DNA of 62,000 bases. It comes from Octopus vulgaris. Its lineage: Eukaryota. Below the pieces are notes generated by a model that was not told where the DNA came from, did no database searches, and saw only the letters and a list, made by a program, of their open reading frames with translations. The position numbers and the translations under genes are program-made. The stretch is taken from NCBI GenBank assembly GCA_951406725.2, contig OX597818.1:27858001-27920000 (forward strand), given 5' to 3'. Below, piece by piece: positions 2,207-62,000 of the stretch. Position 1 is the stretch's first letter, and every line of letters begins with the position of its first letter.

Positions 2207-2266
2207 CTGAGAGAGAGCAAGATGCTGAAGATAATGAGCCCAAATATTTACCTATGAAACACCCAG
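2207..2266 (+). CDS. Micro-exon B1 (60 nt, phase 1-1) of tyrosine-motif tail gene: (A)EREQDAEDNEPKYLPMKHP
   Basis: ttttaaag acceptor, CAG|gtaagt donor, open frame; homologous copies at 2765, 8613 and 10577. Confidence 0.75.
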
Positions 2267-2764: not shown

Positions 2765-2806
2765 CTGAAGATAGTGAACCTAGATATTTATGCATGAAAC
2801 ACTCAG
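2765..2806 (+). pseudogene. Dead micro-exon B2: AEDSEPRYLCMKHS
   Basis: 18-nt deletion relative to B1; donor reads gaaagt instead of gtaagt. Confidence 0.65.
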
Positions 2807-3050: not shown

Positions 3051-3092
3051 ACATGGATGATGTTTTTGTCAGTGTTTCAAGGAAACCTGATG
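3051..3092 (+). CDS. Micro-exon A2 (42 nt): DMDDVFVSVSRKPD
   Basis: cttaaag acceptor, ATG|gtaaat donor; homologous to 478, 8884, 10881, 14560. Confidence 0.7.
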
Positions 3093-8612: not shown

Positions 8613-8666
8613 AAGAGCAACATGCTAAAGTAAGTTATCCTGAATACTTATGCATGAAAGTACCAG
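8613..8666 (+). CDS. Micro-exon B3 (54 nt): EEQHAKVSYPEYLCMKVP
   Basis: tactttag acceptor, CAG|gtaata donor, open phase 1-1 frame. Confidence 0.65.
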
Positions 8667-8883: not shown

Positions 8884-8925
8884 ACAAGGACAGTGTTTAT
8901 GTTAATGTTTCAAGGAACTCTGGTG
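8884..8925 (+). CDS. Micro-exon A3 (42 nt): DKDSVYVNVSRNSG
   Basis: tttttaaag acceptor, GTG|gtaagt donor, open frame. Confidence 0.8.
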
Positions 8926-10576: not shown

Positions 10577-10630
10577 AAGAACAACATGCTGAAGTTAATG
10601 AACCAGAATATCTTTGTATGGAAGAACTGG
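10577..10630 (+). CDS. Micro-exon B4 (54 nt): EEQHAEVNEPEYLCMEEL
   Basis: ctgtag acceptor, TGG|gtaagt donor, open frame. Confidence 0.75.
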
Positions 10631-10880: not shown

Positions 10881-10922
10881 ACATGGATGATGCTCATGTC
10901 AGCATTTCAAAGAAACCCGGAG
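10881..10922 (+). CDS. Micro-exon A4 (42 nt): DMDDAHVSISKKPG
   Basis: ttcttaaag acceptor, GAG|gtaagt donor, open frame. Confidence 0.75.
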
Positions 10923-14559: not shown

Positions 14560-14601
14560 ATTTGGAGGATGTTTATGTGAATGTTCCAAAGACACCTGAT
14601 G
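14560..14601 (+). CDS. Micro-exon A5 (42 nt): DLEDVYVNVPKTPD
   Basis: Long T-tract plus aaag acceptor, ATG|gtaagt donor, open frame. Confidence 0.8.
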
Positions 14602-21582: not shown

Positions 21583-21617
<35 letters not shown>

Positions 21618-23454: not shown

Positions 23455-23465
23455 GTTACCAGTGA
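23455..23465 (+). CDS. Coding part of candidate terminal exon: (G)YQ-stop
   Basis: Strong acceptor ttttattttgtag; phase-1 reading GGT TAC CAG TGA; followed by about 800 nt of non-repetitive AT-rich sequence. Confidence 0.5.
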
Positions 23466-24263: not shown

Positions 24264-24269
24264 AATAAA
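24264..24269 (+). promoter_or_regulatory. Candidate polyadenylation signal for the tail gene
   Basis: AATAAA followed about 22 nt later by a T-run/GT-rich element. Confidence 0.3.
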
Positions 24270-35610: not shown

Positions 35611-35654
35611 ATATCCATGTAAATTGCTGGTTGGTTTTGATTAAATGTATTCAT

Positions 35655-40514: not shown

Positions 40515-40547
40515 ATATAATATAATATAATATATATATGTATATAC

Positions 40548-40632
<85 letters not shown>
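40515..40632. repeat. (TA)n microsatellite
   Basis: Directly visible. Confidence 0.95.

Positions 40633-40640
<8 letters not shown>

Positions 40641-44649: not shown

Positions 44650-44655
<6 letters not shown>
42040..44655 (-). mobile_element. Penelope-like element with inverted terminal copies (~42040-42320 and ~44390-44655), interrupted by an RTE tail at 43183-43450
   Basis: RPIIAGP..LLVSFDV RT motifs; YIGQT (GIY-YIG) near 42660; inverted flanks carry hammerhead-like motifs. Confidence 0.8.
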
Positions 44656-44681
<26 letters not shown>

Positions 44682-44685
<4 letters not shown>

Positions 44686-45870: not shown

Positions 45871-45903
45871 TATATACATACATATATATATACATATATA
45901 CAT

Positions 45904-45954
<51 letters not shown>

Positions 45955-46396
45955 CACACACAAATACATATACATATCAAATGGAAATTGCAGTTATGAT
46001 ACCTGTACGTAAAAAGCACCATCCGAATGTGGCCGAAGCTTCTGTGCTGGTGGCACATGACCTGCTGTGCTTGAGGAGACCTATTGAGTCAAGTACATCA
46101 ACATCAACATCAAAATAAATATCAAATGGAAATTGTAGTTGTGATACCTGTGCCGGTGGCACGTAAAAAGCATCATCTGAACGCGGCCAATGCCTGGCTT
46201 CTGTGCTGGTGGCACATAAAAAGCATCCACTACACTCACGGAGTGGTTGGCGTTAGGAAGGGTATCCAGCTGTAGAAACACTGCCAGATCAGACTGGAGC
46301 CTGGTGCAGCCTTCTGGCTTTCTCGGCCCCGGTCAAACCGTCCAAACCGTGCTAGCATGGAAAATGGATGTTAAACAATGATGATGATGATGTGTG

Positions 46397-46482
<86 letters not shown>

Positions 46483-46589
46483 CATATATACATATATTTA
46501 TAAATAAATAAATATATATACATATATATTCTCTTATTCCTTTATATGTTTCAGCCTTGAGGTAGTGGCTATGCTGGAGCATTGCTATT

Positions 46590-48510
46590 GTAATTACCTA
46601 TTAATTGGCCAATTCTATCTGTTTGGCTCCTGGTGACAGAAGGAGTTTGATATTGCTGCCCTCTTTTGAGTTTCTTGCCTTAATATTGGTTCATCTGGGA
46701 TCTTGGATAGTAAGAGGCCAAGTGTTTTCTTGAAAACATTTACTCCCACTCCATGGAAGTCCCTCAGATATTTTGGCAAGGAGTTAAATAGCTGTGGGCT
46801 CTTGAATCCAAAGCTATTGCAGTATATGGCCCTCACCCTAGATGAGACATCTGGGACTTTTGGAACAGTGCAGTAACATTCATTTCAAGGTCTGGTATAA
46901 CTCACAATTCCAAAGTTTGGTGCCAGCCCCTCCTGTATCTTCCATGCATATATCACTGCATACCTCTCCGATCTTCACTCCAGGGAATAGAATCATAGCT
47001 CTTTCAGTCTCTCCCAGTAGCTCAGTTGTTCCATTGATGCAGTCTTCCTCGTGTTGTATCTCTGAACCATCTCAAGTTCTGCTATTAATCCTACAGTGTA
47101 GGGTGACTATTGTTGAGAGCAGTAGTCCAGATGGCTGAGGACAAATGTCCTCCATAGGACCAGCATAGTTTCCTGTTCCCTTGTTCTGAAGGTTCTCAGA
47201 ATCCATCTGGCCATTTGCCTGCACACTGCCACCATCTTGGTGACAAGCATGTGAAATAAGGCACCGTTGCTCATATCAATCCCAAGACCATGCACCGTAT
47301 GTGATTCTAGGTTTTCTGCTCCTTTTGGTCCAAAGTATCGCTGGTGTGACTTCTGAACAACAAATAACTGGTAGCGGAGGGCTTGGAATTTGCCTGCATT
47401 AAATTACATGCTGTTGTCCTCAGCCCATTTATATATGGCATCTAGGTCTTTCTGTAGAAGCCTAGCATCAGAAGGTTTCTCGACTGCTTGTACTACTTTT
47501 GTGCCATCGGCATAGCTAGTAAGTGTGGCTATGTAACTGAAAGAGCCACCATGAACAGTAGTGGCCCCAATACAGTTCTTTGAGGCACTACACTTTCTAT
47601 TAATGTCTCTGTGAAGAGGGCTCCATTGGCTGCAACAGCCTAGCTTCTGTCTTTTAAGAAGTCATGCAGCCACTCTCCAATTTCCCCAGTTATGCTGAGT
47701 CTCTGTAGTTTGTGACATATCATCCCATGATCAACCTTATCAAAGGCCTTCCCAAAGTAAAGCTATATCACATCTACATTTGAGCGATTCATTAATTGTT
47801 TCAACATCCAGTCATAGTGTTTAAAAAGCTGTGTAAGGCAGCTTCTGTCTGAGTGAAAGCCATGCTGCATATCAGGAAGCAAATCATTATCTTCAAGAAA
47901 TGCAATTATTTTCTTCCTGACAATGTGCTCCATGACTTTGCTGATATGGTAAGTTAGAGAGACAGATCTATAATTCTTAAAGTCTGCTCTGCTACCTCCT
48001 TTAATGCCTTCCTTTAACTTTTTGGAAAGCCTCCCTGTTGTGAGGAAACTCTGAAAGAGAATCTGAAGTGGTCTAGCTAGACCCCCTTTGCATTTCTTTA
48101 GGAGGATTGTTGGGAATCCATTAGGGCTTGTTGCTGAGTTTGAGCTCATCTCATCAATGGCTGATATCACATCAGTTTCCTATACGTTGATGCTTTCAAT
48201 AATTGTCATTTTTTGTGTAGATCTGTGGAGCCAAAGAACTCATCAGGCATAGCTACTTGCAAGAGTTCCAGTGGAGTTGTGAAAGCACTCTTGTATTGTT
48301 CATTCAATATTTCACTGATCCTCTGGGGGTCTGCAGTCAGTGAGCCATTTTCTTCAAGTATTGGCCCTATTTTGTACCATACTGAAGCAGCTTCTTTTGT
48401 ATATCTATAGAAGGATTTAGGGGTTGTCTTAATATTTTTAACAGCTCTGGCCTCCTTTTCTACCCTCTCCTTTTCATGGGAGCATTTGAGTTCAATTTCG
48501 ATCTCAAACA
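46590..48510 (-). mobile_element. Decayed CR1-group LINE RT
   Basis: NYRSVSLT..SKVMEH, QHGF..RSCLTQL, KAFDKVDH, LDYCSQ motifs. Confidence 0.85.
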
Positions 48511-48539
48511 ATGTTCGTTTGCGGTAGGATTGTTTGTTA

Positions 48540-49478
48540 TCCTTTAGTGGCCTATTTAGATGATTTGAGATTTTTGCTCATCATCTCCTATCCCTGCTGT
48601 CTTGGCATTCTCTCTGGGATGATGATGGGTGCCTGTGAGGATGGTGGTGTTGAAGAGGTAGGAGCAAGTGTGGCAGCATGGGAACAAGCCAGGTTTGGAG
48701 GTGGGGTTAGGGAAGAAACTGTGGACCAGGAGGCCACACAGGTTGTGGGCTCATTTGAAAGTGGGAAGGGGTAAGTTGGGGAAGATGTGCGAAGTGGAGG
48801 GGTCAGATTGGAGTCTCCAAAAAGGCTTGGAGAATGGTACATTGGAGGGGTAGGGTGGAGGGGTAGTAAATGAGGGGAAACAGGAGATGACAATGGTGGG
48901 GCAGGTCTGTGGAGAGAGAGAGCAGAGGCACCGTCCATGGAACATGCTCTGGCATGGGTGGTGTGGATAGTGGTGAGGGGATGCCCATGAAGGATGAAGT
49001 AGTGAGCCATTAGTTGAGACTGAGTCTCAAAGTCATGATTGCCACTGCAGAGCCTGCGCAAATGGAGGAATTGGGAGTAGGTGATAGAGAGCTTGGTTCG
49101 AGTAGGGTGGGAGGAGGAGAAGATGAGGTATGAGTGTGAGTCAGTGTGTTTGTAGTGGATGGAGGTAGTGAGTGCGGAGTTGTTTATATTGACCAAAATG
49201 TCAAGAAAGGTGACGGAAGTGTTGGAAATGGTGCAGGAGAATTCAAGGACAGGGTGGAAGCACTGGACAAAAGAGAGGAAGGAGTCTAGTTGTTTGCAGA
49301 AGAGTGAGCTTGCACTGATACAATCATCAATATAATGATTGTATAGTTCAGGAATGGGATCGATGGATCTTGAAAATATTTGGGTCTCAATGTAGCCAAT
49401 GAACAGGTTCACATAGTTGGGACCCATTCTCATTCTCATGGCCACTCCTGAAGACAAATTCACTGCAGTTAGCACAGA
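48540..49478 (-). mobile_element. Penelope-like element RT fragment
   Basis: GVAM..RMGPNYVNLF, YIDDC, VTFLDI, IHYKHTDSHSYL, SQFLHLRRLCS. Confidence 0.85.
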
Positions 49479-49894
49479 GAAAAAATAGTAAAAAGTTGTA
49501 AAAATGTCCTATCTATCCATTGCTACTATCCCAGATGTGTTTCTAGCTCTTTAGCTGTTATTGATAGGAAATAGTAAAGATACTGGTGAATTTTGTATAT
49601 ATATCATGGACTCTCCCTTTGTTAGATGATGTATTAAGGTTTGGTAATTTCTTGCCGAACAACCACACAGATGATTTGTAGTGATCAAATGTTTGTGTAC
49701 ACAGAAGCTTACCCCTTCATCAAATTGACATTACCTGTACAGGTGCAGCATGTGCCACATGTCAGATGATGAAATGATCACAGAAGAACCTGAAATGAAG
49801 TGCTTTGCTCAAAAACACAATGTAATGCCCAGTCTGGGACCCAGGAACTCACAATCATGAGTGCAACAACCTAACCATTAAGCCATGTGCCTTC

Positions 49895-49937
<43 letters not shown>

Positions 49938-50399
49938 GTATGGGGTAAAAGTCTTAGGTCTTGGTTGAGTGTAAAGGTAGGTAATTTTCAAAGAAGCATT
50001 CAGCTCAAATACTGGGCTATCAACACTGTCAGATTCCAGGCCAATGTCCAAATTCCTCAGTTGTAGATAATCCTTATTTCATGACAATCACATCATAAAG
50101 TGAGTTTGGTGAAGAGTAAATTCTAATCAAAATGATAAAACAAAGAAAATTCTTTAACACATCTTTAATGATTTGTTACAATTGTTTCTGTACCAACTCT
50201 GTTTGCAATGCCTTCAGTTGGTTATCCACTTGTCATCCTCAGTTGGTTATCTTGTAAAAATTTCATGTTGTTCTCTATGTTATATGTCTCTATGTCCTCC
50301 TCCTTCTCATCAAATGCTTCAATTAGAACATCTCTAAATCTGTGACTCTGTAAAGCCCTAAAGTATAAAGTCACTAACTACTAACATATGTTGAGTTAT

Positions 50400-50990
50400 G
50401 CAATCTCAACCAGAGAAGAACTTCACATTCATTGGCATCTGCTTGCCCCTGTTTCTGGTGAGAAGTTATCTGGTTTATGAGCCCTCCAGATCAATAAGTT
50501 GCTAGCTGGTTTTCTGAAGTTAGTGTTCTTTATTTCTAGTACCAAATCCATAACAACTATGCATACCATGAAATCCATTGGAATGCTTCCCAACATATCC
50601 ATTGAAGTCATCAACCATGATTAATAAGTTCACTTTCTTTTGTTGTTGAGGTATTCTGCAAAAGGGACTCATAGAAATGGTCCTCTGTTCATTGTCAGGC
50701 CAGTGTGGGGAGTATATGCAGAGATAAATGTCACTGTCACATTATACGACTAGTCTTAGCCTAATAATGCTATAACACACTCTGAGTACATTGATCACCT
50801 TATCCATTTCCAGCCGAAAGTATACTATACTATCGAACTCATCATTACTGCTTACCCAAAAGAATTTATATCTATATTCCTTGCCCACAAGCAATCTAGC
50901 TGAGGCTCCCTTCCATCACGCCTCTTGTACACAGCACATATATACATGTCTCCACTCTATCATTTCAATAATCTCACAATAATTCCCTTT
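50400..50990 (-). mobile_element. Decayed RTE endonuclease fragment
   Basis: Homologous to 1400-2000, reverse orientation. Confidence 0.6.
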
Positions 50991-51039
50991 CACTTATAGA
51001 AGCTATAAATTTGCAAGTTGGGAAGATTCTAGTGTATTT

Positions 51040-51760
51040 TAAAGCACTGTCATTAAAAAAGTTACATTCGAAGAATAATCCATGTCCTTACTGAAGTTAA
51101 TCCAAACTGGAGAATAGAGTTCTGGGAATGATATTTGGAAAATGCTCATTTTCCTACAAAAAATGTTTGATGTGATGAGACTACATTTAATTTAAAGGGT
51201 TCAATTAATTATTACAATCGACTCTCCCAGGGATCTGTGAATTCACAAATGAGAATTCATTTTAATTTATCAGGTTTAGAGCACAATGCAGCTTATCATC
51301 AAAAGAATTGGACAATACTTTTTTGACAGTATTGTGACTGGTGTTATTTACTTGAACTTGTGATAATCTGTTTGCTAAGCAGTAAAGAGTACCTTGAAGT
51401 TGTGGAGTTTTATTTCCAGCAAGATGGGGAACATCCACATCATCATAGTAATGTAAGGACCTACCTTGATAAGATTTTGCCAAACTGGTGGATTGGATGA
51501 AGATGTTCAGCAGAATACTCTCCACATTCATCAGATCTCTCACTACTAGACCGACCTCTTTTTTGTATAGGGATACTTAAAAGATAAGAATGTCCACATA
51601 TACCAAATGAAATGCTTCTGGAGGTTTGCAATTCCATTGTACTGTGTTATCACCAGTGCTTGGACCAGAATGGTCATCTGTTGGAAGGCATGTGCTCATA
51701 AAACAATTTAATTCTCTCTGCAGATTCTATCCAATTTTGGAAATGAAATGTATTTTAATA
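51040..51760 (+). mobile_element. Decayed Tc1/mariner-superfamily transposase (FQQDG..PH..VR.YLD...WIG...SPDL type)
   Basis: FYFQQDG, VRTYLD, WWIG, SPHSSDL remnants. Confidence 0.6.
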
Positions 51761-51824
51761 AATATTGACTTTATAGTCAATGTGTGAACATTTGTTTGGT
51801 ACTTCTGTGTGTGAACAAACACAT

Positions 51825-51831
51825 ACATACA

Positions 51832-51862
<31 letters not shown>

Positions 51863-51960
51863 CATACATACATACATACATACATACATACATACATACA
51901 CACACACACATACATACATTACATACATACATACATACATACACACACATACATACATAC
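51825..51960. repeat. (TACA)n microsatellite
   Basis: Directly visible. Confidence 0.95.
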
Positions 51961-52528
51961 ATGGTGGCTGCCCCCTCGTTATTGAGTATGGCCATTGCAC
52001 GAAGCTTAATCAATGTTGTTATCATGCAATGCCTGTGCAAGAAGATTTTTTTTTAAGTGAGAAAAGGCTGTGCACTGAGTCAATCCCACTCACTAAGCAA
52101 CAGCAGCCATAATCCGAAAAGAAGAACAAGTCAACATCATCAGTAACCACTGAGCCGTAGGTTTTATGTCGGAGTTATCCCAGTTACCTGAGTTACCTTC
52201 TCCTGGAAAGATGCCCTAACAAAGGCTAGGAGTCCTTCACTCCCAATGGTTTAACCACGCGATCAGGTATTCAGTCTGATTATTTCTATGTCCGATTATT
52301 TCTATGTCCCCGCACATGATACAGCCTTAAGACATTTAATGGATGGCCGTTGACTCTCAAGAGTTCCTCCGCCCTTTGACGGGTTTTGATTTTCTTCCCG
52401 CAGGGTGTCCAATAAACACCCTCTTCACCAAGCAGGCTTAGTGGGGTTGCCGGTTTAGTTGCCGACGACCCGACCATGCAACAGGCTGTACTGGGTTACA
52501 TGTTACCAATAGCACTTGAAAGTGACAA

Positions 52529-52567
<39 letters not shown>

Positions 52568-52849
52568 TACATACATACATACATGTATATATATTTATTA
52601 ATTTGCACATTTAACTTAACTTGGATGTGATATTTTAATGATGCAATAAACTGCAGTATATAGTCCCTAGAAATTATCTTGTATAGATTATAAATGCAAA
52701 AAAGCACAAATTATATTGGCAGATGAACTTAATAAACACTTGTGTTAGGACTGCTGTATCATGTGATTTCAGCATATGTTTGTATCTTCAGTAGTAGTTA
52801 CCTAAATGCTAAATGCTAGACCAAAATTTCATCAAATATATATATGTTT

Positions 52850-53310
52850 ATACAAGGGAGAATCAAAAATTATATGCACTCTTGTGTTTTCAATGTATTT
52901 ACACAAAAGCAAGGGATAAACAAGTATGTAATTTTTCTATATAGTCTCCTTCATTTTCAATACAATTGGTGCAGAATTCCACAAGCTTGCATATTCCCTC
53001 CAAGAAGGTTTCCAGTTGATCATACAACCATTTATGCACCACTTTCTTCATATCTTCATCTATGGGAAATTGACGACCTCGCAAGCCATCTTTGAGTAGT
53101 CCAAAGATATAATAGTCAGAAGGGGCAAGATCTGAGCTATAGGTAGGGTGTTCCAGTACCTCAAAACCCAATTGGTTAATAGTTTGAATGGTCTGTGTGG
53201 GCTTGCATTGTCATGCAGCAACAATGTTTGGTGCAAGTGAACCCTGCTGCACTCTTCACCACAACTTTCTCTCACTCTTTCTTCCTGTTTCTGTCGTGCC
53301 TGTATTTCAA
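52850..53310 (-). mobile_element. Mariner transposase 3' fragment
   Basis: LHDNASPH, HPTYSSDLAPSDYYIFG. Confidence 0.8.
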
Positions 53311-53482
53311 AGAGCCAGACTTGACTCACTCTATGTCACACTGAATCTCCCCGTGAACTACGTTAAGGGTACACATGTCTGTGGAGTGCTCAGCCACACA
53401 CTTGTTAATTTCACAAGCCAGCTGTTCCATTGATCAGATCAACTGGAACCCTCGTTGTCATAACTGACAGAGTGCTACGATG

Positions 53483-53535
<53 letters not shown>

Positions 53536-53543
<8 letters not shown>

Positions 53544-53858
53544 CGTGTGTTTTTATTGGCTAAACTGACAAAATGACCATTCCGAAATATAACAATATAT
53601 ATATATATATAAATTAGAAAAAAAACACCTTTTATCAATTCAAAATGAAAAATTAAACTTATCAAAGTATATGTATATATATATATATATAGATATATAT
53701 ATTATATATATATATAATATATATATACTTTGATAAGTTTAATTTTTCCTTTTGAATTGATAAAAGGTGGTTTTTTTCTAATTTATATATATATATATTG
53801 TTATATTTCGGAATGGTCATTTTGTCAGTTTAGCCAATAAAAACACACGCACTATATA
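53536..53858. repeat. Near-perfect palindrome (~150-bp arms, TA-rich centre)
   Basis: tagtgcgtgtgtttttattggctaaactgac... mirrored as ...gtcagtttagccaataaaaacacacgcacta. Confidence 0.9.
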
Positions 53859-54178
53859 TTTGGTGTTATTTTGCTTCAGTGTTATTTATTTTTTACATTA
53901 ATCTTAATCTAATTTCCGCCAGAGTTCTTTCGTCACACTCCTGTGACCGCATCAGTGGTCCTTTGTTTTCTTCTTTCTTATTTGTGTCTCTCCTTACTAA
54001 CCGTCAGCCATTTTGTATTTCTATTGTATGTCTTCATTTGCGCATGTTTATTATTTGCGTCTATGTTTATTTAGTGTGTGTGGGGGGATGCCTGTAATAT
54101 TTGTATTCCGAAATATAACAATATCTGTTTCAACACACGACTTCACATAAAAAATCTTGCACAACAAATATATAAACG

Positions 54179-54210
<32 letters not shown>

Positions 54211-54500
54211 TCCGTAATAATGAAGGGTGAAATTAATTAATTTGGAATAATTATCAATTACACCAAGTAGTCTTCGGCATGTAAAAGCCTCATTCGAGGA
54301 AAATTTAAGTAATACTAAGCAATAAAGGGTTTAGCAACGAATTGCCTTACCACATACCGAATTTAGAAATAGCAGTCAAAGAGTTATAGCTATTTCTTCT
54401 ACTAAAAAGGGAGATCTCAGTAAAAACAGCAATTGGAAGGCAGACACAAACAGGTAAGAGAGAATGAATTGACGGCAATCTATCATACATTTTTAAGTTA

Positions 54501-54607
54501 TCTACGGACGTACGTTTCGAAATCAAGTTTTTAGGAAAGCATAAGAATTAAATATTAAATATTAAATAATTCTATCTTACCGAAACTTCTTTTCTCTTCA
54601 GCGTAGA
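54501..54607 (-). ncRNA. Type I hammerhead ribozyme, core intact
   Basis: Minus strand: UCUACG CUGAAGA G...C GAAA CGUACG UC CGUAGA; 6-bp helix I, long helix II, palindromic helix III, GUC site. Confidence 0.7.
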
Positions 54608-55799
54608 ATACTATAATCATAAATGATTATATATTGAATTTTGAGATACTAGAAGGCACCAACTCAACTCAGTATCAGAGCGAGCTAGAATCCGCAACTA
54701 GTATCACCGCAACTAGTATATATATATATAGATATATATATATATATATATAATGTGTGTGTATTTGTGTATTGTATATAAGTGGGGTGCAAAATAAGTA
54801 ACTGAGGTAAAATGAATAATTTCTGATTTCTTGATATTTTCTCCCTATCATTACATTGCAAGTATTGCCTCATTATTTTATACTGGTGCATCATCTTTAG
54901 AAGTAAAAATTCGTCAGCACAGTTGTTGTTGTTGTTGAAGTTGAGAGATTTTGGAAAATAATCAGGTGACAAGTATTTCTTTTCAAGAAATTTTTCCTCT
55001 ATTTCGACCTGTTTGTAACTGAGGTTGCTAATGAAATATCTGGGTGTCAATTTTTTAAAAAACTGATGTCTAAGATGGGATAAAATGGGCCATGATTAAT
55101 TTTAGAAATTTCTTCTCTTTAACTGCATGTTGTGTAAATATTTTGGGAAGAGAGCCACTTCAGCAGATTGTGAAGAAGCTAAAGAGTATATTTTATGTTG
55201 AGGTTTTTTGATTAATTTCATGTCTCATGCCATTTTTCCCTGATTCTCTTTCATTTGACCTAAAAGTTAAAAATTTTTGTTGCAGTTTTCATCCTTCTGA
55301 TGTCTAATGATGTATATTCATATGTATGAGTTTGTTTTCAAATGTAATTCTGAAGAATGAAAGAGGTGAATTTACATTTCCTCTTGGCTTGCTGATTTTG
55401 CCTCAGGTAAATTTATTTTTTATATGTTCAAAGAGAATGGTGATAATTTTCTGAAACAGTGTTCAGATTGTTCAAATATTTTTAATGCATTTAGAGAAGA
55501 TCATTTACTTGGCTGATACTGTTTTTGTAAGCTTGTGAAAATTTATCAAAAATATATTTCTTCTCAATGTCAAAAGTGCAGTCAAAGCTCCTCATTGTGT
55601 CCTATCATATATCCATCCATCCACACACACACACACACACACACACATAAATAAATAACAACAGATTGATAATATGTCAATCCACTACAGCTGTTTCCAA
55701 CGAATTTTTAATTGATTAATGGAAACATTACATCATTAGAAAATCCCATTTTCCTCAGGTAAATACATGAATCATAACATTCAAAAACATGCAAAAGCC

Positions 55800-56370
55800 A
55801 ACATGCAGTGGAAGCACCCTACCACACATACTCCAAAAAAGGCCAAGGTCATTTAATCAGCAAGCAGAGTGATGGTCTCAGTTTTTTGGAATGCAAAAGG
55901 CATTGTGTCTATTAACTATCTTCAAAAGAGCCACACCATCAATGACAAGTACTATGCCAACTTGCTGAGGAAATTACTAAAGGCTATCAAGACCAGATGC
56001 TCAAAGTGGTCTTGTTTTATCAGGAATATACTCCAGCACAGAAGTCCTTGGTTTCAATGGCTGCTGTGCATGAGTGTGGTTTTGAATTGGTTGATCAACC
56101 TCCCTATTCTCCTGATTTGGCCTAATCTGACTATCACCTGTTCTCTAACATAAAAAAAAACAAGGCTGGGAACTAATGTCACAATGATCATGACATATGT
56201 GTTGTTGATGACTTTTTTGACCAACATCATGAAGTAGGATCCAAGCACTGCAACCCCAATGGAAAAAATGTATGGACTGCAAAGGGGACTATGTTGAAAC
56301 ATAAACCTCATTTGATCACATTCCATGTGAGTATCTTGATCAGCCTATGAACTTTCCTGCCAGCCCTCAT
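55800..56370 (+). mobile_element. Mariner transposase 3' fragment
   Basis: MVSVFWNAKG, YYANLL, PPYSPDLA.SDYHLF. Confidence 0.8.
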
Positions 56371-56842
56371 AATATGTTTAAAGGAATTTTGTGACTTTGC
56401 TGGTGTGGAATACAACAGCAGTTGAAATTATTTTTTACATTTATTCTAGCATGAAATCCTACTTTTCTTCCAAGCCTGGGACTGATAAAACAGAGAGATA
56501 TGTTTAGTTTTTTTTCATGAATAGCCCAGTTTTTGGCAACAAATTAGAGGACAGTACCAAGCAGAGGTACCAAACTAGAAATGCAAAACTTGAATACAAT
56601 TATGGAAAATCGTCACCATCATCATCACCACCAACACCACCACCATCATATCTTATATACTTGCTCTTCATGATCTCACCATGATAATACTTGTTGTTCA
56701 GTGGGTTCCTGTTTTTGCATAGACAAGCTTCTATGATTAATGTTAAGTTATTTTCTACATTGTAGTATTTTGCATCATGGACTTCATGCTCCTTATTTGT
56801 AGAAATTGTTCCTATCAGTGTTTATTCTTTTGTTTGTAGATA

Positions 56843-56897
56843 ATGGAATTCAATCTGTTATATTTGAAATACCTGTTTATTATTCAATTTTTCTGTG
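56843..56897 (+). CDS. Signal-peptide exon (exon 56840-56897): MEFNLLYLKYLFIIQFFC, phase 1 end
   Basis: ttttgtttgtag acceptor, ATG at 56843, GTG|gtaagt donor; hydrophobic N-terminus that joins 61200 in frame. Confidence 0.7.
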
Positions 56898-57308
56898 GTA
56901 AGTAACACTATGTTTCTGATATAAACACTTTTTGACCCTGACTGTCTATATCTATTATCATAGCCAATATATAGATCCAGAGTTGTACAAAGTGTATCAG
57001 AGAATATTCACTATTAGATGAAATGTAGACATGGACATGATTCTGTGATCTAGAAGTTAAGTGCAAACATGGCTAAGAAGTTTGTGTCCCAACCATGTGG
57101 CTTTGGTTTCAGTCTCACGCCAAGGCAACGTTGGCAAGTATCTTCTACTGTAACTCCAGATTAACCAAAACCATGTGATTGGATTTGGCAGATAAAACTG
57201 AAAGATGACCATCATATATATATATAAATAAGACAAGTAAAAACAATAACGTGAAGATGTGGCACATGCAGAGTATTAATAAAATACTCAGAGAAGGAAA
57301 GAAAGGGT

Positions 57309-57344
57309 GATTTACATTTCGAGCAAAGCTCTTCTTCAGAAACA
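57309..57344 (-). ncRNA. Minimal type I hammerhead-like motif (degenerate)
   Basis: Minus strand: UGUUU CUGAAGA A GAGC UUU GCUC GAAAU GUA AAUC. Confidence 0.45.
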
Positions 57345-57607
57345 GTGCCTAGAGGAGGTAGTGCTGCCCTGCGTGAAGAAGGTGGCTGCTAGAGGGCCCT
57401 TATGTCTGACAACAGAACTCTGCACCATGCCACACAAGCATGGGAACCCAGTCATAGCTGTCACACAATTTTTGCGACTACAGTAATGCAGTATGCTTAT
57501 TTTGATTTTAATCACCTTATTTTGAAATTGTATGGATAATAGCGTACTAAATTCTGGTGCCTCAACTTAAGTACCATATTCATTTGAATCTAAATTTTTG
57601 CTGAACT

Positions 57608-57655
<48 letters not shown>

Positions 57656-59768
57656 ATAATAATAATAACGGGTAAAATTAATTAATCAATTAATAATTAT
57701 TAATTTTACCAAGTAGCTCGGTATCTTAAAAGAACCATTATGGGTAAAATTATACAAAAATTCTATAATTATGAGCAGAATTATAATTAGGGTTCGGCAG
57801 AATTTACTTCACCACATACCAAAATTTAGAAATAGCAGTTAAATACTATTCTGCTACCATAAGATATCTCCCAGACATGCTCATAATTATAGAATTTATA
57901 TATATATATATATATATATATAGTGAGAGAGAGAGAGAGTGGTATATATGTATGTGTGTATTTGTATGTTATTAATGTAAGGTGTTCAAGGATGGTGTAC
58001 GTAAGTGAGTGGAAATGAAATAATCAGAAGGCTTTTTGGGGGGTGGTTAATATAACAGATTTATTTAGAGAGAGGGCACAGTGTAACAAATAAACAAATG
58101 TAATTGTGATTTTCACTTGTGTATAATGATGTGTGCGATGATAGAAATAACTATCTGCTGGAGTGATGCTGGCAGAGAAAATAAACAGTAAAAATCCATA
58201 CATTGTGTGAAAGAGAAAATGCAATAAATTGTTTCCAAGTGAGTGTATAAGTAACTCATCAGCATGTTGTTCCATGTGACCGAGGTCACTGGACAATTGA
58301 TTATTGTTTGTTAACCTTCTTGCTTCTAGGCAGCAACTGACTTTTCTTACTTGAATTTTGGCACCAGTCATGCTGGGCAGAAGTCATCATATTCTTTTGC
58401 TGCTAGCTTTTAAAGAGCAGAGGAATGCAGCACTAGTGTGTTGCTATTCTGGAATGAAATAGTTCGACTGCACTGCTACAGATACCTTCCCCCAGACTGC
58501 AAGTCAGTCAAAGCAGCTAGGGATTGTAGGGTGTTAAGCACACATTAAAAAACAAAACAATAGCAATTTGGACATTATAATCACAAGGGCATGCAAGGAA
58601 TGGTCCAGGACCAGCAATAATTACAAAGAAAAGTTAGAAATCACAAGACATCTGATTATAGGAAAAAAAAAATGTCAAGCAAAATATCGGATATTTACAA
58701 ACATATATGCAAGGAGAAAAAGAGTCCTGTACAGCAAAAACAAATGTACACAATAGCAAAAAGGAAGCAGTAGGAAGGTCTTCATAGCTTGCTGTCCAAG
58801 AAGGTGGTCTCCATGAGATAGAGCAAGCAGAACCTGTGAAGTAGTTCAACTGCAGTGCTACAGTGGCTTTGTTGATGGCATAGTCTACTGCATAAAGCAT
58901 GACTGGGCTTCTTAATACATTGTGCAATCAGAAGAAAATACTCGTTTATATGTGTTGTTTATTTTCAGTTCTCTGCATAGACATGTCCAAGGGAGATTAT
59001 TGCCTTGCCTGGAAACAAGTGGGGGTTTGTGGCAGAGAGGTCATCCAGTCATAGAAAATTCTGACCTAAGTAAATGTTAAAATGATGATGATGATGATGA
59101 TGATGATGATAACGATGATGGTGATATATTCTGCTCAATATAGAAGTTCTAAAGAGTGAGAGTGAAGCAAAATGTTGAAAAAATGTGAAAAATATATTAA
59201 AACTCACTTATACAAAGATTTTTCAGGAAAATTAAGTTGACTGACAAATTCTTGATGTCATTAGTCTATGAAAGATCATTGCTATGACTAACTATATCAA
59301 TAATCCTTTCTACTATAGGCACAAGGCCTGGATCTTTGTGGGGAGGGGGACAGTCAATCATATTGACCCTAGTACTCAAGTGGTACTTAATTTATCGACT
59401 CCGAAAGGATGAAAGGTAAGTCGACCTTGGTGGAATTTGAATTTAGAACATAATGGCAGACAGAATGACAGACATAATGTCTCAATGCTTCTCATTGAGA
59501 CATTTATTTTACAACTATTATTCCTCCTGATTAGAAGATATAATATGTGAGTCATTGACAGCAAGGTGATGTCTTAGGCATCATCTATGATATATATTGA
59601 TGTCACTCCTACTTAGCTCTCACATTTCATTCTCTTTGAAATATCCTCTATAAGACTAATCACATTCAATTTTAAATTATATATTAAAAGGAATTTTTCC
59701 ATTAATCCTCATAGTTTTCATTTATTTTAAATTGTTGTCTTTCCATTAGAAAACTTACACATTTTAAA

Positions 59769-61024
59769 TATAGGGTTGTCTGGAAAGTTCTTGCCGATTT
59801 ATAGTAGCTTACCTTTCAACTTATTTTAGAACATGGTTGAGTCCTTAAAATAGGATTTGACTATACCTCCATTTAGAGCACAGTTTAAGCTATCTTTTCA
59901 TGGAAGAAGGTTTATGATCCTATAACCTGTGTTAATTCTGTAACCCTTTAAAATGGAAGATAAGACAGTTCATTTTCGGCACTTGATGCTTTTCTTTTTC
60001 CATAAAGGGAAAATCCTCACAAGCAACCAAAGAAATATGCGCAATTTACGATGATGTTTCTTTATCTGAAAGAACTGTACGGAAGTGGTTCACAAGGTTC
60101 TGAGCTGGAGATTGTAGCCTTATTGATAAAGAGCAATCAGGCAGGTCATCCACTACAGATGATGACCAAATCAAGTCATTAATTGAGAATAACCCACATT
60201 GCACAACCTGAGAATTAGCAGAAAGCCTCAACCTATCAAAATCTGTCATTCATGAGCACCTGGTAATGCTTGGGTACACAAATCACTATGATGTTTGGGT
60301 ACTACATGAGTTGAGTGAGAAGAACATTTTGGATTGCATTTCCATCTGTGATTCACTTTATAAATGGAATGAAAATGTGCCTTTTTTTTAAAACAAATTG
60401 TGACAGGTGATGAGAAATGGATTATCTACTGAAATGTTCAGAGAAAGCAATCCTGGAGTAAGCGACATGTGCCACCCTTAGCCACCCCAAAAGTGGGTCT
60501 TCACCCTAAAAATGTCTTGCTTTGTGTCTGGTGGGTTTGGAAAGGAACTCTGTGCTATGAGCTTCTCCCAAGTAACCAGACAATTAATTCTGAGAAATAC
60601 TGCACACAACTGGATGAGTTAAAACAGCAATACAAGAGAAACATCCAGAATTGGCCAACAGGAAGGGTGTTGTTTTCCAACATGATAATGCAAGACTGCA
60701 CATTTCTTTGGAAACAAGACAAAAATTGCTGCATATTCACCAGATATTGTTCCTTTGGATTTCCACTTATTCAGGTCTCTGCAGAATAGTCTTAATGGTA
60801 AAAATTTCAATTCCTTGGATGACATAAAAAGATACCATGATGAATTCTTTGCCATGAAACCACCTCAATTTTGGGAAGAGGGTATTTTCAAGTTAAAGGA
60901 AAGATGGAGATGCATTGTGCAACAAAATGGTTCATATTTGGTTGATTAAAAATGTAATGGCAAGTATTTATTGACCTTTTTCTTTCCTTTAAAAATCGGC
61001 ACAAACTTTCCGGACAACCCAATA
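59769..61024 (+). mobile_element. Full-length but decayed mariner in the signal-peptide/Ig intron
   Basis: ~32-bp TIRs; TGDEKW, PKVGLHP, D.ARLH, DFHLFRSLQNSL; multiple stops and frameshifts. Confidence 0.9.
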
Positions 61025-61067
61025 ACAAGGTAGCTATTAAACAATATGTTTGTATTTATATATAAAT

Positions 61068-61175
61068 GTATGTATGTATGTATGTATGTATGTATGTATG
61101 TATGTATGTATGTATGTATGTATGTATGTATGTATGTATGTATGTATGTGTATGTATGTATATGTATATATATGT
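61068..61175. repeat. (TATG)n microsatellite just upstream of the Ig exon acceptor
   Basis: Directly visible. Confidence 0.95.
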
Positions 61176-61199
61176 GACTTATATTTTCTTTTCCTTCAG

Positions 61200-61475
61200 T
61201 TTCTCTCAAAGAAATTGACATGGTAAAATTTGTCAGGAAAAAGCAACCAACAGCTCTTGAATGTCTTGCACAGCAAAAAGTTGAATACTGGCAAATCAGA
61301 ACACAGAAAATGAGTGGTCCTGGCTGGTCACCTATCAAAAATAATGAATTTGAAGCAAATGTGCTTTCTGAAAAAGCCAACATTTTAAACGTCACTCTTC
61401 TTTCAAATAGTGATTTAACATTAACTTGTCAGGGCACTGACAAAGAGATAAAATTTCAGGCAATACCACTATATA
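61200..61475 (+). CDS. Ig-like domain exon (276 nt, phase 1-1) of an IgSF cell-surface or secreted protein
   Basis: ttttccttcag acceptor, ATA|gtaagt donor; (V)SLKEIDMVKF...ALEC...EYW...LNVT...DLTLTCQG...IPLY, with two Cys separated by 54 residues, a Trp after the first Cys and an NVT sequon. Confidence 0.75.
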
Positions 61476-61792
61476 GTAAGTACCATATAGTAATCGTATT
61501 TTCATATTTTCCTGACCATGAACAAAATATATTTCTCTAAACACTAACTTTGGGTTTCAGTCAAGTCATAAAATCTGATAGTTGTAACCAACAAATATTG
61601 TCAATAATATTTTAATATCTATAAATTTCCTTCTTATATCATTCCAGTAATATTGAAATAGCAATATTATGGCTGAGATTATTTGTTTGATTTGCAGAAG
61701 AGAGATTTAGTTGCTAGTATGTGATCCATGAATTGTTCTTGGTTTGATGAAATTCACAAAATTATTAATTATTCTAAAAGGCTCAGAAATGT

Positions 61793-62000
61793 TATGTATG
61801 TATGTATGTATGTATGTATGTATGTATGTATGTATGTATGTATGTATGTATGTATGTATGTATGTATGTATGTATGTATGTATGTATGTATGTATGTATG
61901 TATGTATGTATGTATGTATGTATGTATGTGTGTGTGTGTATGTATGTATGTATGTATGTATGTATGCATGCATGCATGCATGTATGTATGTATGTATGTA
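61793..62000. repeat. (TATG)n microsatellite
   Basis: Directly visible. Confidence 0.95.

What the first reader, a model, noticed from the sequence alone, without database searches (positions are those of the whole stretch)
56840..61475. Start of an unannotated divergent Ig-superfamily gene downstream of the tyrosine-tail gene: possible tandem receptor cluster
Seen: a signal-peptide exon and a 92-codon phase 1-1 exon splice to MEFNLLYLKYLFIIQFFCVSLKEIDMVKFVRKKQPTALECLAQQKVEYWQ...LNVTLLSNSDLTLTCQGTDKEIKFQAIPLY. Known: one-domain-per-phase-1-exon is typical of IgSF genes, and a DxxLTC F-strand without the DxGxYxC Tyr resembles C2-type domains. I do not recognise it as a conserved neural IgSF. 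Inference: same strand and adjacent to a gene ending in YxxM/YVNV cassettes, so the two may be paralogues of a fast-evolving Ig receptor family (immune, allorecognition or sensory). Nothing in this window proves the link.
Basis: partly seen in the sequence, partly recalled or inferred. Interest (0 to 1): 0.7.

Follow-up and report, generated by a model that had tools for sequence, protein, structure and literature searches.

The report
Start of an octopus Ig-receptor gene
The two exons are real: they begin a cell-surface immunoglobulin-type receptor gene that sits in a tandem cluster of similar genes found only in octopuses, is already predicted (but unstudied) in a sister species, and is hidden by a mis-merged gene model in the species closest to this window.

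Summary
Observation confirmed. Exons 56840-56897 and 61200-61475 have canonical splice sites, phase 1, and splice to the quoted peptide. A third exon lies upstream at 55326-55406. The peptide is 85% identical to the N-terminus of Octopus bimaculoides LOC106874069, and the flanking DNA is collinear with that locus at about 90%.

The orthologue is a type I membrane protein. It has a signal peptide, six domains of one phase 1-1 exon each, a transmembrane exon, and a tail of 14- and 20-residue tyrosine micro-exons that differ between its eight predicted isoforms.

The upstream "tyrosine-tail" gene matches LOC106879981 cassette by cassette. That gene's first domain is 56% identical to this one, so the paralogue inference holds. 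At least five related genes are placed on one strand over about 0.75 Mb in O. bimaculoides. Relatives were found only in Octopus and Argonauta.

Domain 1 matches no Pfam or PDB sequence profile. It keeps an invariant Cys-Trp-Cys triad and models as an eight-strand beta-sandwich (pLDDT 84.8) whose fold matches are mostly Ig domains. It is the most diverged domain in every paralogue pair, with dN/dS about 0.9 between species.

Function is untested. It is a new, lineage-specific family of a known kind. Interest is moderate.

The parts
55326..55406 (+). 5' exon of the gene, with an ATG at 55326 and an in-frame 27-codon ORF. The true transcript start is unknown and this exon may be largely 5'UTR.
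   Evidence: It matches residues 1-27 of LOC106874069 isoforms at 24/27. The donor is CAG|gtaaat. The homologous exon is at L001 10001-10081, 95% nt identity.
56840..56897 (+). Signal-peptide exon (IMEFNLLYLKYLFIIQFFC plus 1 nt). MEF is the conserved start in most paralogues.
   Evidence: It is 19/19 residues identical to the orthologue and 57/58 nt identical. No signal-peptide predictor was run.
56898..61199 (+). Intron of 4.3 kb. It carries a decayed mariner-type transposon at about 59770-61129 that is absent from O. bimaculoides, plus microsatellites.
   Evidence: PF01359 hit, E 3e-17, for 60469-60786. The alignment jumps from L001 17275 to 17296. Tandem repeats.
61200..61475 (+). Domain-1 exon: 92 codons, phase 1-1, predicted Ig-like beta-sandwich at the membrane-distal end.
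   Evidence: invariant C22, W31, C77; pLDDT 84.8.
2207..2266 (+). Upstream paralogue, tail cassette (A)EREQDAEDNEPKYLPMKHP, a YxxM motif, phase 1-1.
   Evidence: Identical to O. sinensis XP_036359227 residues 974-993 and 16/18 to the LOC106879981 tail.
3051..3092 (+). Upstream paralogue, tail cassette DMDDVFVSVSRKPD.
8613..8666 (+). Upstream paralogue, candidate tail cassette EEQHAKVSYPEYLCMKVP (YxxM). It is not used in the O. sinensis model.
   Evidence: AG acceptor and gtaata donor are present.
8884..8925 (+). Upstream paralogue, tail cassette DKDSVYVNVSRNSG (a YxN motif and an S-x-Y-x-x-V motif).
   Evidence: 14/14 to XP_036359227 residues 1008-1021.
10577..10630 (+). Upstream paralogue, tail cassette EEQHAEVNEPEYLCMEEL (YxxM).
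   Evidence: 18/18 to XP_036359227 and 15/18 to LOC106879981.
10881..10922 (+). Upstream paralogue, tail cassette DMDDAHVSISKKPG. The tyrosine is replaced by His.
   Evidence: It parallels DMDDAHFNISRKPD of LOC106879981.
14560..14601 (+). Upstream paralogue, last tail cassette DLEDVYVNVPKTPD (YxN).
   Evidence: It parallels DLDDVYVNVSKKPD of LOC106879981. The DNA is paralogous to the last cassette of L001.
23455..23465 (+). Upstream paralogue, terminal coding exon (G)YQ plus TGA. About 0.8 kb of sequence downstream is paralogous to the sequence just beyond the last coding exon of LOC106874069.
   Evidence: Window 23559-24297 aligns with L001 98403-99287. The family C-terminus is D/G-Y-Q.
2765..2806 (+). 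Decayed cassette copy (AEDSEPRYLCMKHS) with a broken donor (G|gaaagt).

Best explanation
The finding is the 5' end of the O. sinensis/vulgaris-type orthologue of Octopus bimaculoides LOC106874069. It comprises a 5' exon, a signal-peptide exon and the exon for the first extracellular domain.

The gene belongs to an octopod-restricted, same-strand tandem cluster of single-pass IgSF receptors. By orthology, the full protein has:

- a signal peptide;
- six beta-sandwich domains, each encoded by one phase 1-1 exon;
- one transmembrane exon;
- a 130-290-residue cytoplasmic tail assembled from phase 1-1 micro-exons of 42 and 60 nt.

Each micro-exon carries one or two tyrosine motifs: (E/D)P(R/K/E)YLxM, (D/G)xY(V/I)N(V/I), and in some cassettes QYAE(I/V). 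Because every cassette is phase 1-1, cassettes can be included or skipped freely. The eight predicted isoforms of the orthologue differ only in cassette content and in their C-terminal ending.

Proposed mechanism (inferred, not shown):

1. The membrane-distal domain 1 is the family's most diverged domain and sets ligand specificity.
2. Engagement leads to tyrosine phosphorylation of the tail.
3. pYxxM sites dock a PI3K-p85-type SH2 protein and pYxN sites dock a Grb2/Drk-type SH2 protein.
4. Cassette splicing tunes the number and mix of docking sites.

The upstream gene in the window matches LOC106879981, a true paralogue. I put identity and architecture at about 0.9 and the signalling mechanism at about 0.5. 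The biological role is open.
For: Identity and orthology:
- 85% identity, E 4e-53, to LOC106874069.
- Collinear DNA at about 90% on both sides: window 34003-41610 with L001 1428-9706, and 55046-61919 with L001 9721-18085.
- Same exon positions and phases.

Architecture:
- Orthologue sequences.
- Exon map, all exon lengths divisible by 3.
- Pfam I-set, Ig_3 and C2-set_2 on family members above their cut-offs.
- TM segment and tail motif census.
- Isoforms X1-X8 differ only by cassettes and by the ending DYQ versus GKISQNFWDDLIYV.

Domain 1:
- Invariant C22, W31, C77 with 55-residue Cys spacing.
- AF2 with a 10-sequence alignment gave pLDDT 84.8, pTM 0.73 and 8 strands. W31 lies in the third strand and C77 in the seventh. 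C22 directly follows the second strand.
- Most Foldseek top hits are Ig domains: CD4, FGFR2 C2, IgLON, Neph1, titin, TCR.

Diversification of domain 1:
- It is the lowest-identity domain in all 28 paralogue pairs, mean 0.43 against 0.59-0.66.
- dN/dS is 0.89 between species, with 22 differences spread 7/8/7 over the codon positions.

Cluster on CM046605.1, plus strand:
- LOC106869178 at 34.297-34.381 Mb.
- LOC128247863 at 34.430-34.475 Mb.
- LOC106874069 at 34.857-34.946 Mb.
- LOC128247864 at 34.992-35.021 Mb.
- A 704-aa Ig gene starting at 35.031 Mb.
- LOC106879981 is on the same chromosome record with a 258-kb range, but its position was not returned.

Precedent for tail exons: a 19-residue cytoplasmic exon carrying a tyrosine is alternatively spliced in PECAM-1 and changes its behaviour (PMC2132561, abstract seen).
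Against: - Only three exons lie in the window, so the rest of the gene is inferred from another species.
- Domain 1 evolves as if neutral between the two species. 41% of neutral simulations keep the frame open, so a recently dead copy in this species cannot be excluded.
- No protein with this domain 1 at more than 85% identity was found among O. sinensis or O. vulgaris proteins of 435-1380 aa.
- Domain 1 matches no Ig profile.
- Foldseek E-values are weak, best 1e-3, with TM-scores 0.4-0.64 normalised to the query. Some top hits are non-Ig sandwiches such as VirB9 and an S-layer protein.
- SH2 docking rests on motif consensus recalled from knowledge of vertebrate signalling. No phosphorylation, binding or expression data were available.
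- The isoforms are computational (NCBI) models.
Confidence: 0.8

Rival explanations
1. The copy in this window is a recently inactivated or decaying paralogue. The exons are relics that look intact only because too little time has passed.
For: - dN/dS is 0.89, and the differences fall evenly on codon positions 1, 2 and 3 (7/8/7).
- The exon is no better conserved (92%) than the neighbouring introns (86-93.5%).
- 41% of neutral simulations stay open.
- No separate protein for it was found in O. sinensis or O. vulgaris.
- The cluster does contain decayed cassette copies, for example 2765-2806.
Against: - There is no indel in 276 nt, whereas the flanking introns differ in length between the two species.
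- Both splice sites of all three exons are intact and conserved.
- All eight family-invariant residues of the domain are kept.
- The signal-peptide exon is 57/58 nt identical.
- The missing annotation is explained by a composite 780-kb gene model that skips the locus.
- Rapid change of domain 1 is a family-wide property, also seen between intact genes.
Confidence: 0.12
2. The exons are not a separate gene. They are internal or alternative exons of one giant transcription unit that also contains the upstream tail cassettes, as the O. sinensis model LOC115212116 implies.
For: - The O. sinensis model spans 780 kb.
- It uses the window's exons at 2207-10630 as residues 974-1039, then continues with 180 residues that have no match in the window.
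- All exons of the family are phase 1-1, so read-through splicing would stay in frame.
Against: - That model is a mosaic. Residues 1-300 best match LOC106869178, residues 350-800 and 950-1050 best match LOC106879981, and residues 1051-1220 best match a third gene (P0026). This is the pattern of a mis-merge.
- The upstream gene has its own terminal exon and stop (23455-23465), followed by sequence paralogous to that just beyond the last coding exon of LOC106874069.
- The finding starts with its own 5' exon and a hydrophobic leader. A leader in the middle of a cytoplasmic tail makes no sense.
- In O. bimaculoides the two genes are modelled separately, with 5 and 8 isoforms.
Confidence: 0.05
3. 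Domain 1 is not an immunoglobulin-type domain. It is a different or novel beta-sandwich placed in front of an Ig chain.
For: - No Ig profile hit for any of the 10 domain-1 sequences. The best was 'ig' at E 0.16 in one member, and a cytokine-receptor D2 family at 0.054 in another.
- No PDB sequence hit.
- No Tyr corner or DxGxYxC motif. The sequence reads SDLTLTC.
- Foldseek E-values are no better than 1e-3, and VirB9 and S-layer sandwiches rank among the top hits.
Against: - The invariant Cys...Trp...Cys triad has spacings of 9 and 55 residues. In the model W31 lies in the third strand, C77 in the seventh, and C22 directly after the second.
- The exon is one phase 1-1 domain exon, like the five recognised Ig exons after it.
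- Roughly 70% of the top 50 fold matches are Ig domains (my count).
- The control failed too: profile comparison did not link the family's recognised Ig domains to each other, so sequence silence is uninformative here.
- Hydractinia Alr domains are a precedent for Ig folds that lack the diagnostic motifs.
Confidence: 0.1

Closest known systems
Octopus bimaculoides LOC106874069 (XP_052824255-263, 'uncharacterized protein'; UniProt 'Ig-like domain-containing protein')
   Same: Orthologue. It is 85% identical over the 110 residues encoded here, with the same exon positions and phases and collinear flanks at about 90%.
   Different: It comes from a different species. The window adds a mariner insertion in the intron (59770-61129) and a 13-kb block of transposon sequence upstream (41610-55046). 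In O. bimaculoides domain 1 has lost the N-x-T sequon at residue 64. Neither gene has been studied.
Paralogues in the cluster: LOC106879981, LOC106869178, LOC128247863/4 and LOC106874055 (O. bimaculoides); LOC115212114/116/249 and LOC118763632 (O. sinensis and O. vulgaris); one Argonauta hians protein
   Same: Same leader (MEF..LL.LKY...C.CVSL), a homologous domain 1 at 41-62% identity, D2-D6 at about 60-80% identity, the same TM (IIGCTVG..LL..L), and cassette tails ending in D/G-Y-Q.
   Different: The number of Ig domains differs (six here, eight in LOC106879981). The number and type of cassettes also differ. Some relatives (P0031, Argonauta P0033) instead carry YAKVNKP repeats and a terminal xYA(E/D)L...TIYAD(L/I) pair.
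PECAM-1/CD31 (vertebrate)
   Same: It works alike in layout. PECAM-1 is an IgSF adhesion molecule, and a 19-residue tyrosine-bearing exon in its cytoplasmic domain is alternatively spliced and changes ligand-binding specificity (PMC2132561, abstract). That it has a chain of C2-type Ig domains, one exon each, and a tail built of several short exons is from my own knowledge.
   Different: No detectable sequence relationship. The PECAM-1 tail uses ITIMs, whereas the orthologue of this gene has no ITIM or ITSM consensus. PECAM-1 is a single gene, not a cluster.
Vertebrate clustered IgSF immunoreceptors (LILR/KIR in the leukocyte receptor complex, Siglecs/CD22, SIRP)
   Same: Tandem same-strand clusters of paralogous type I IgSF receptors, a fast-diverging membrane-distal domain, and tyrosine motifs in the tail. 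The comparison rests on my own knowledge. PMC1193534 was listed but not read.
   Different: No homology beyond generic Ig domains. The motifs here are mainly YxxM and YxN docking sites rather than ITIM or ITAM. No partner adaptor, polymorphism or immune expression is known.
Hydractinia Alr family in the allorecognition complex
   Same: An invertebrate, lineage-specific cluster of IgSF genes. Its N-terminal domains escape the diagnostic Ig sequence motifs but are predicted to fold as Ig. Tyrosine motifs occur in many tails, and alternative splicing and exon shuffling are reported (bioRxiv 10.1101/2022.03.04.482883).
   Different: Unrelated in sequence and phylum. Alr genes number 41 over at least 11.8 Mb and have a shown role in allorecognition. 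Here there are about six genes per genome, no known function, and solitary animals without tissue fusion.

Membership tests
Immunoglobulin superfamily (Ig-like domain), for domain 1 encoded at 61200-61475 | Beta-sandwich of seven to nine strands | tested here: met
   AF2 with a 10-sequence alignment gave mean pLDDT 84.8, pTM 0.73, 8 strands and no helix. The single-sequence model was poor at 45.9. This is a prediction only.
Immunoglobulin superfamily (Ig-like domain), for domain 1 encoded at 61200-61475 | Conserved Cys (strand B) and Cys (strand F) 55-75 residues apart, with Trp in strand C | tested here: met
   C22, W31 and C77 are invariant in 10 sequences, with a Cys spacing of 55. W31 lies in the modelled third strand and C77 in the seventh. 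C22 directly follows the second strand.
Immunoglobulin superfamily (Ig-like domain), for domain 1 encoded at 61200-61475 | Significant match to an Ig sequence profile (Pfam Ig clan) or to a solved Ig chain | tested here: not met
   Pfam returned nothing for the window peptide. The best hit among 10 members was 'ig' at E 0.16. PDB phmmer and profile hmmsearch returned nothing meaningful.
Immunoglobulin superfamily (Ig-like domain), for domain 1 encoded at 61200-61475 | Structural similarity to solved Ig domains | tested here: inconclusive
   Foldseek against PDB gave no hit with E at or below 0.001. The best listed was 1.0e-3, with TM-scores 0.40-0.64 normalised to the query. Most top hits are Ig domains, but VirB9 and S-layer sandwiches rank alongside them.
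Immunoglobulin superfamily (Ig-like domain), for domain 1 encoded at 61200-61475 | Tyr corner / D-x-G-x-Y-x-C before the F-strand Cys (V- and I-set hallmark) | tested here: not met
   The sequence reads N-S-D-L-T-L-T-C, and Leu occupies the Tyr position in most of the paralogues. This argues against V-set or I-set, not against the fold.
Octopod clustered IgSF receptor family (LOC106874069 and relatives) | Homologous leader and domain 1 at the N-terminus | tested here: met
   E 4e-33 to 5e-13 to eight representatives, five of them aligned from residue 1 of the query. 85% identity to the orthologue.
Octopod clustered IgSF receptor family (LOC106874069 and relatives) | Position in the cluster (synteny) | tested here: met
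   Collinear blocks with L001 on both sides of the gene start. The upstream neighbour carries the family's tail cassettes and its D/G-Y-Q stop exon.
Octopod clustered IgSF receptor family (LOC106874069 and relatives) | Further Ig exons, a TM segment and a tyrosine-cassette tail in the same gene | not testable with these tools
   The window ends 525 bp after domain 1. In the orthologue the next exon lies 4.5 kb further on. The feature is present in the orthologue. The source assembly could not be reached.
ITIM/ITSM inhibitory immunoreceptors (Siglec, PECAM-1, SIRP, LILRB type) | (S/I/V/L)xYxx(I/V/L) or TxYxx(V/I) motifs in the tail | tested here: not met
   The orthologue's tail has 9 Tyr, 2 YxxM, 2 YxN, 0 ITIM and 0 ITSM. 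The regex, which also allowed Leu at the last position, found one such motif each in the distant relatives P0031 (TIYADL) and Argonauta P0033 (TIYADI).
ITIM/ITSM inhibitory immunoreceptors (Siglec, PECAM-1, SIRP, LILRB type) | Recruitment of SHP-1/SHP-2, and immune-cell expression | not testable with these tools
   No expression or binding data were available. No paper mentions these loci.

The most novel reading that the evidence does not exclude
Incirrate octopods independently evolved a compact complex of clustered IgSF receptors. Its membrane-distal domain diversifies at a near-neutral or positively selected rate. Its cytoplasmic signalling output is set combinatorially by alternative splicing of one-motif micro-exons (PI3K-type YxxM, Grb2-type YxN, and SHP-2-type TIYADL in relatives). 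This would be a cephalopod counterpart of vertebrate leukocyte-receptor or Siglec clusters, or of cnidarian Alr genes. It might be used for immune or self/non-self recognition, for example by haemocytes or in sucker self-avoidance.
Probability: 0.2. Interest if true: 0.75.

Novelty: new member of a known kind. Interest (0 to 1): 0.42.

Why it matters
Cephalopod immune and cell-recognition receptors are poorly known, and no paper in the searched library mentions any of these loci.

If the family is functional, it offers three things:

- A tractable set of about six genes per genome. It could show how a large-brained invertebrate without antibodies builds variable surface receptors.
- A clean natural example of a signalling tail built from interchangeable single-motif exons.
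- A concrete annotation fix. The O. sinensis model LOC115212116 (780 kb) fuses at least three cluster genes and hides this one. Several O. vulgaris models have wrong N-termini.

The kind of molecule, an IgSF type I receptor with phosphotyrosine docking motifs in a tandem cluster, is familiar. The surprise is therefore moderate until expression, polymorphism or ligands are known.

Tried and rejected
- Pfam on the spliced 110-aa peptide and on all 10 domain-1 sequences gave nothing significant.
- PDB sequence search with the single sequence and with the profile gave nothing meaningful.
- Single-sequence AF2 was too poor to use, pLDDT 45.9.
- hhalign of the domain-1 profile against profiles of D2-D6 gave no signal. 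The control comparisons among the recognised Ig domains also failed, so the test is uninformative and was dropped.
- Exact-protein look-up of the window ORF 61220-61537, tried to find the source contig and the downstream sequence, was not on record.
- Look-ups for P0010 and P0025 failed because only the longest isoform is indexed.
- P0004, P0008 and P0037 returned no DNA because their gene ranges exceed 100 kb.
- I first took the O. sinensis protein P0004 as direct proof that the upstream gene has a related ectodomain. I rejected this after finding that the model is a three-gene mosaic. The O. bimaculoides protein LOC106879981, a 5-isoform model spanning 258 kb, was used instead.
- The Pfam 'MHB haemophore' hit in the P0004 tail was dismissed as an artefact of the repetitive cassettes.
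- Rfam found no RNA family in the window.
- A profile search for relatives outside octopods found none. This is limited by the word prefilter and by which cephalopod proteomes the collection holds.

Full report
**1. What is in the sequence**

The window is AT-rich animal DNA, 30-46% G+C, full of microsatellites and transposon remnants.

- 56840-56897 follows the acceptor ttgtttgtag. It contains ATG at 56843, encodes MEFNLLYLKYLFIIQFFC plus one base, and ends at G|gtaagt.
- 61200-61475 follows ttttccttcag. It is 276 nt (92 codons, phase 1-1) and ends at A|gtaagt.

An open frame of this size alone would not be remarkable in this window. There are 124 ORFs of at least 70 aa, mostly repeats. The test therefore had to come from homology.

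**2. Homology and orthology**

Pfam and PDB sequence searches of the spliced peptide found nothing.

A full HMMER scan of 1.84 billion representative proteins found eight relatives, E 4e-33 to 5e-13, 44-61% identity. Five of them align from residue 1 of the query. Seven are Octopus proteins named 'uncharacterized' or 'Ig-like domain-containing'. The eighth is an unnamed ORF from a Logan assembly.

I then ran a search restricted to the first 110 residues but allowing full-length candidates. To pass the length filter I appended the rest of a paralogue; only residues 1-110 were scored. It found O. bimaculoides LOC106874069 at 85% identity, E 4e-53.

I fetched that locus as L001 (CM046605.1:34,847,337-34,955,730). 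Window 34003-41610 aligns to L001 1428-9706, and window 55046-61919 aligns to L001 9721-18085, at about 90%. The window is therefore the orthologous locus of a sister species.

Sixty-six of 66 residues of four upstream exons are identical to O. sinensis XP_036359227. The source is therefore O. sinensis or the very close O. vulgaris.

The orthologue's models start one exon earlier, and the window has that exon too. It runs from ATG 55326 to CAG|gtaaat at 55406 and is in frame with 56840.

**3. The whole gene, by orthology**

Mapping isoform X1 onto L001 gives this exon series:

| Exon | Length |
|---|---|
| 5' exon | not sized |
| Leader exon | not sized |
| Six domain exons | 276, 312, 321, 258, 255, 309 nt |
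| Transmembrane exon | 105 nt |
| Juxtamembrane exons | not sized |
| Tail micro-exons | 42 or 60 nt |

Every junction is phase 1.

Pfam recognises I-set, Ig_3, C2-set_2 and similar domains in the family's later domains.

The tail of the orthologue has 9 tyrosines in 135 residues, including 2 YxxM and 2 YxN. Isoforms X1-X8 differ only in two ways:

- presence or absence of the cassettes DVEDVYATISSEPS, TVEEQYAEISEPKYLEMKQQ and NMDGAYVNISKKPG;
- the ending, DYQ versus GKISQNFWDDLIYV.

The next exon (D2) lies 4.5 kb beyond D1 in L001. It therefore falls outside the window, which ends 525 bp after D1.

**4. The upstream gene and the paralogue claim**

The window's first 24 kb carries phase 1-1 cassette exons, all with AG and GT sites:

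| Coordinates | Peptide |
|---|---|
| 2207-2266 | EREQDAEDNEPKYLPMKHP |
| 3051-3092 | DMDDVFVSVSRKPD |
| 8613-8666 | EEQHAKVSYPEYLCMKVP |
| 8884-8925 | DKDSVYVNVSRNSG |
| 10577-10630 | EEQHAEVNEPEYLCMEEL |
| 10881-10922 | DMDDAHVSISKKPG |
| 14560-14601 | DLEDVYVNVPKTPD |

A terminal exon at 23455-23465 reads (G)YQ-TGA. The sequence after it is paralogous to the sequence just beyond the last coding exon of LOC106874069.

Order and wording match the tail of O. bimaculoides LOC106879981...REQDAEDSEPRYLPMKHP / DIDDVYDSVSREPE / DMDGVYVNVSKNSG / EEQHAEVNEPEYFCVEDL / DMDDAHFNISRKPD / DLDDVYVNVSKKPD. That protein begins with a homologous leader and a domain 1 that is 56% identical to the finding's.

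The cassette regions of the two genes also share 70-78% DNA identity across exon and intron.

The two genes in the window are therefore paralogues. The roughly 31-kb spacer between them contains a 13-kb block of transposon sequence absent from O. bimaculoides.

**5. The cluster**

On CM046605.1, all on the plus strand:

| Gene | Position (Mb) |
|---|---|
| LOC106869178 | 34.297-34.381 |
| LOC128247863 | 34.430-34.475 |
| LOC106879981 | 258-kb range on this record, position not returned |
| LOC106874069 | 34.857-34.946 |
| LOC128247864 | 34.992-35.021 |
| 704-aa Ig gene (same length as LOC106874055) | from 35.031 |

Searches with the full protein and with a family profile returned the same 15 clusters. 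All are from O. bimaculoides, O. sinensis, O. vulgaris and Argonauta hians. No paper mentions the locus names.

**6. Why it looks unannotated**

O. sinensis LOC115212116 (P0004, 1220 aa) has a gene range of 780 kb with another Ig gene nested inside. Segment-wise identity shows it is a mosaic:

- residues 1-300 best match LOC106869178 (70-90%);
- residues 350-800 best match LOC106879981 (70-96%), and residues 950-1050 match its tail at 78-80%;
- residues 1051-1220 best match a third gene, P0026 (58-100%).

It uses the window's exons at 2207-10630 and then jumps to exons that have no match in the window. If those exons lie downstream, the finding's exons sit in an 'intron' of this mis-merged model.

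The O. vulgaris protein P0008 even starts with an out-of-frame translation of the homologous leader exon.

**7. Is domain 1 an Ig domain?**

The evidence is as follows.

- Ten domain-1 sequences share invariant C22, W31 and C77. This is the classical pin of the Ig fold, with a 55-residue Cys spacing.
- AF2 with this alignment gives pLDDT 84.8, pTM 0.73 and eight strands. W31 lies in the third strand and C77 in the seventh. C22 directly follows the second.
- Foldseek against PDB returns mostly Ig domains (CD4, FGFR2 Ig-C2, IgLON, Neph1, titin, TCR). The E-values are weak, none at or below 0.001, with TM-scores 0.4-0.64 normalised to the query. A few unrelated sandwiches rank alongside.
- Sequence profiles stay silent.
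- The Tyr corner is absent.

I conclude that the Ig-like fold is well supported as a prediction. Subtype (C2, I or other) is undecided.

**8. Rate of change**

In all 28 paralogue pairs, domain 1 is the least conserved domain, with a mean of 0.43 against 0.59-0.66 for D2-D6.

Between the window and O. bimaculoides the exon has 22 substitutions: 17 non-synonymous and 5 synonymous, dN/dS 0.89, spread 7/8/7 over codon positions. Exon identity is 92% against 86-93.5% in the adjacent introns.

Five of the 17 replacements fall in the five residues after C22 (LAQQKV to LELKNI), which the model places in the B-C loop.

This pattern fits either diversifying or relaxed selection on a recognition surface, or recent loss of constraint. 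A neutral simulation keeps the frame open 41% of the time, so the data cannot separate these.

Four observations favour a live gene:

- there are no indels;
- the splice sites are intact;
- all invariant residues are kept;
- the leader exon is almost unchanged.

**9. Mechanism**

Shown:

- the gene start;
- orthology;
- cluster membership;
- paralogy with the upstream gene;
- the exon logic.

Inferred from the orthologue: a type I membrane topology with six domains and a modular tail.

Inferred from general knowledge of SH2 specificity:

- pYxxM recruits PI3K p85;
- pYxN recruits Grb2;
- the TIYAD(L/I) motif of distant relatives resembles SHP-2-binding sites.

The closest working analogue I can name is PECAM-1, where a 19-residue tyrosine-bearing cytoplasmic exon is alternatively spliced and alters function (PMC2132561). 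The closest invertebrate analogue of the genomic arrangement is the Hydractinia Alr complex. Neither is a sequence relative.

**10. Verdict**

The object is an ordinary kind of molecule, a clustered IgSF receptor, in a lineage-specific and unstudied family. That family is already predicted in one public annotation and mis-modelled in two others. Interest is moderate. It would rise if expression, polymorphism or ligands pointed to recognition functions.

Noticed in passing
window 2207-10630, and O. sinensis XP_036359227 (P0004): The O. sinensis gene model LOC115212116 spans 780 kb and is a mosaic of at least three neighbouring cluster genes. It uses this window's upstream cassettes as residues 974-1039 and then continues with exons that have no match in the window.
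   Followed up: yes
window 56818-56898 versus O. vulgaris CAI9722592 (P0008): The N-terminus of this O. vulgaris protein model (…VVDNGIQSDTFEILVNCTMLLW) is an out-of-frame reading of the family's leader exon. It is an annotation error in a paralogue.
   Followed up: partly
window 59770-61129 and 55869-56150: Decayed mariner-type transposase remnants (PF01359) lie in the two introns of the gene start. The one at 59770-61129 is absent from the O. bimaculoides orthologous intron.
   Followed up: yes
window 41610-55046: A block of about 13.4 kb has no counterpart at the orthologous O. bimaculoides position. It contains a reverse-transcriptase ORF (44766-45830, minus strand) and other repeat ORFs, and is a lineage-specific transposon accumulation in the intergenic spacer.
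   Followed up: partly
window 478-519 and 2765-2806: Two extra cassette-like copies (DDVYVSVSRKA…, AEDSEPRYLCMKHS) have a good acceptor but no GT donor. They are decayed duplicates, which shows that the tail grows and shrinks by local tandem duplication.
   Followed up: partly
window 10881-10922: In this cassette the motif tyrosine is replaced by histidine (DMDDAHVSISKKPG). The O. bimaculoides orthologue has the same change (DMDDAHFNISRKPD), so a 'dead' docking cassette has been kept in both species.
   Followed up: no
window 4745-5140: A very long (CTT)n microsatellite of about 130 units, followed by a short (CCT)n run.
   Followed up: no
window 9207-9485, 17376-17661, 21381-21610, 35642-35873, 36231-36436, 43186-43462, 46147-46455: A high-copy dispersed repeat of about 200-300 bp in both orientations, with ten or more copies also in the O. 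bimaculoides locus L001. It is probably a SINE. Rfam found no RNA family in the window at gathering thresholds.
   Followed up: no
window 15554-15724 versus P0002 (O. bimaculoides LOC128247863) residues 374-431: The C-terminus of this paralogue's protein model is 64% identical to a retrotransposon reverse-transcriptase fragment, so the model probably runs into a transposon.
   Followed up: no
tails of P0031 (O. vulgaris) and P0033 (Argonauta hians): Distant family members carry a different tail: repeated (D/E)LYAKVNKP units and a terminal xYA(E/D)L … TIYAD(L/I) pair that resembles ITIM/ITSM sites. The family may include members with opposite signalling output.
   Followed up: partly
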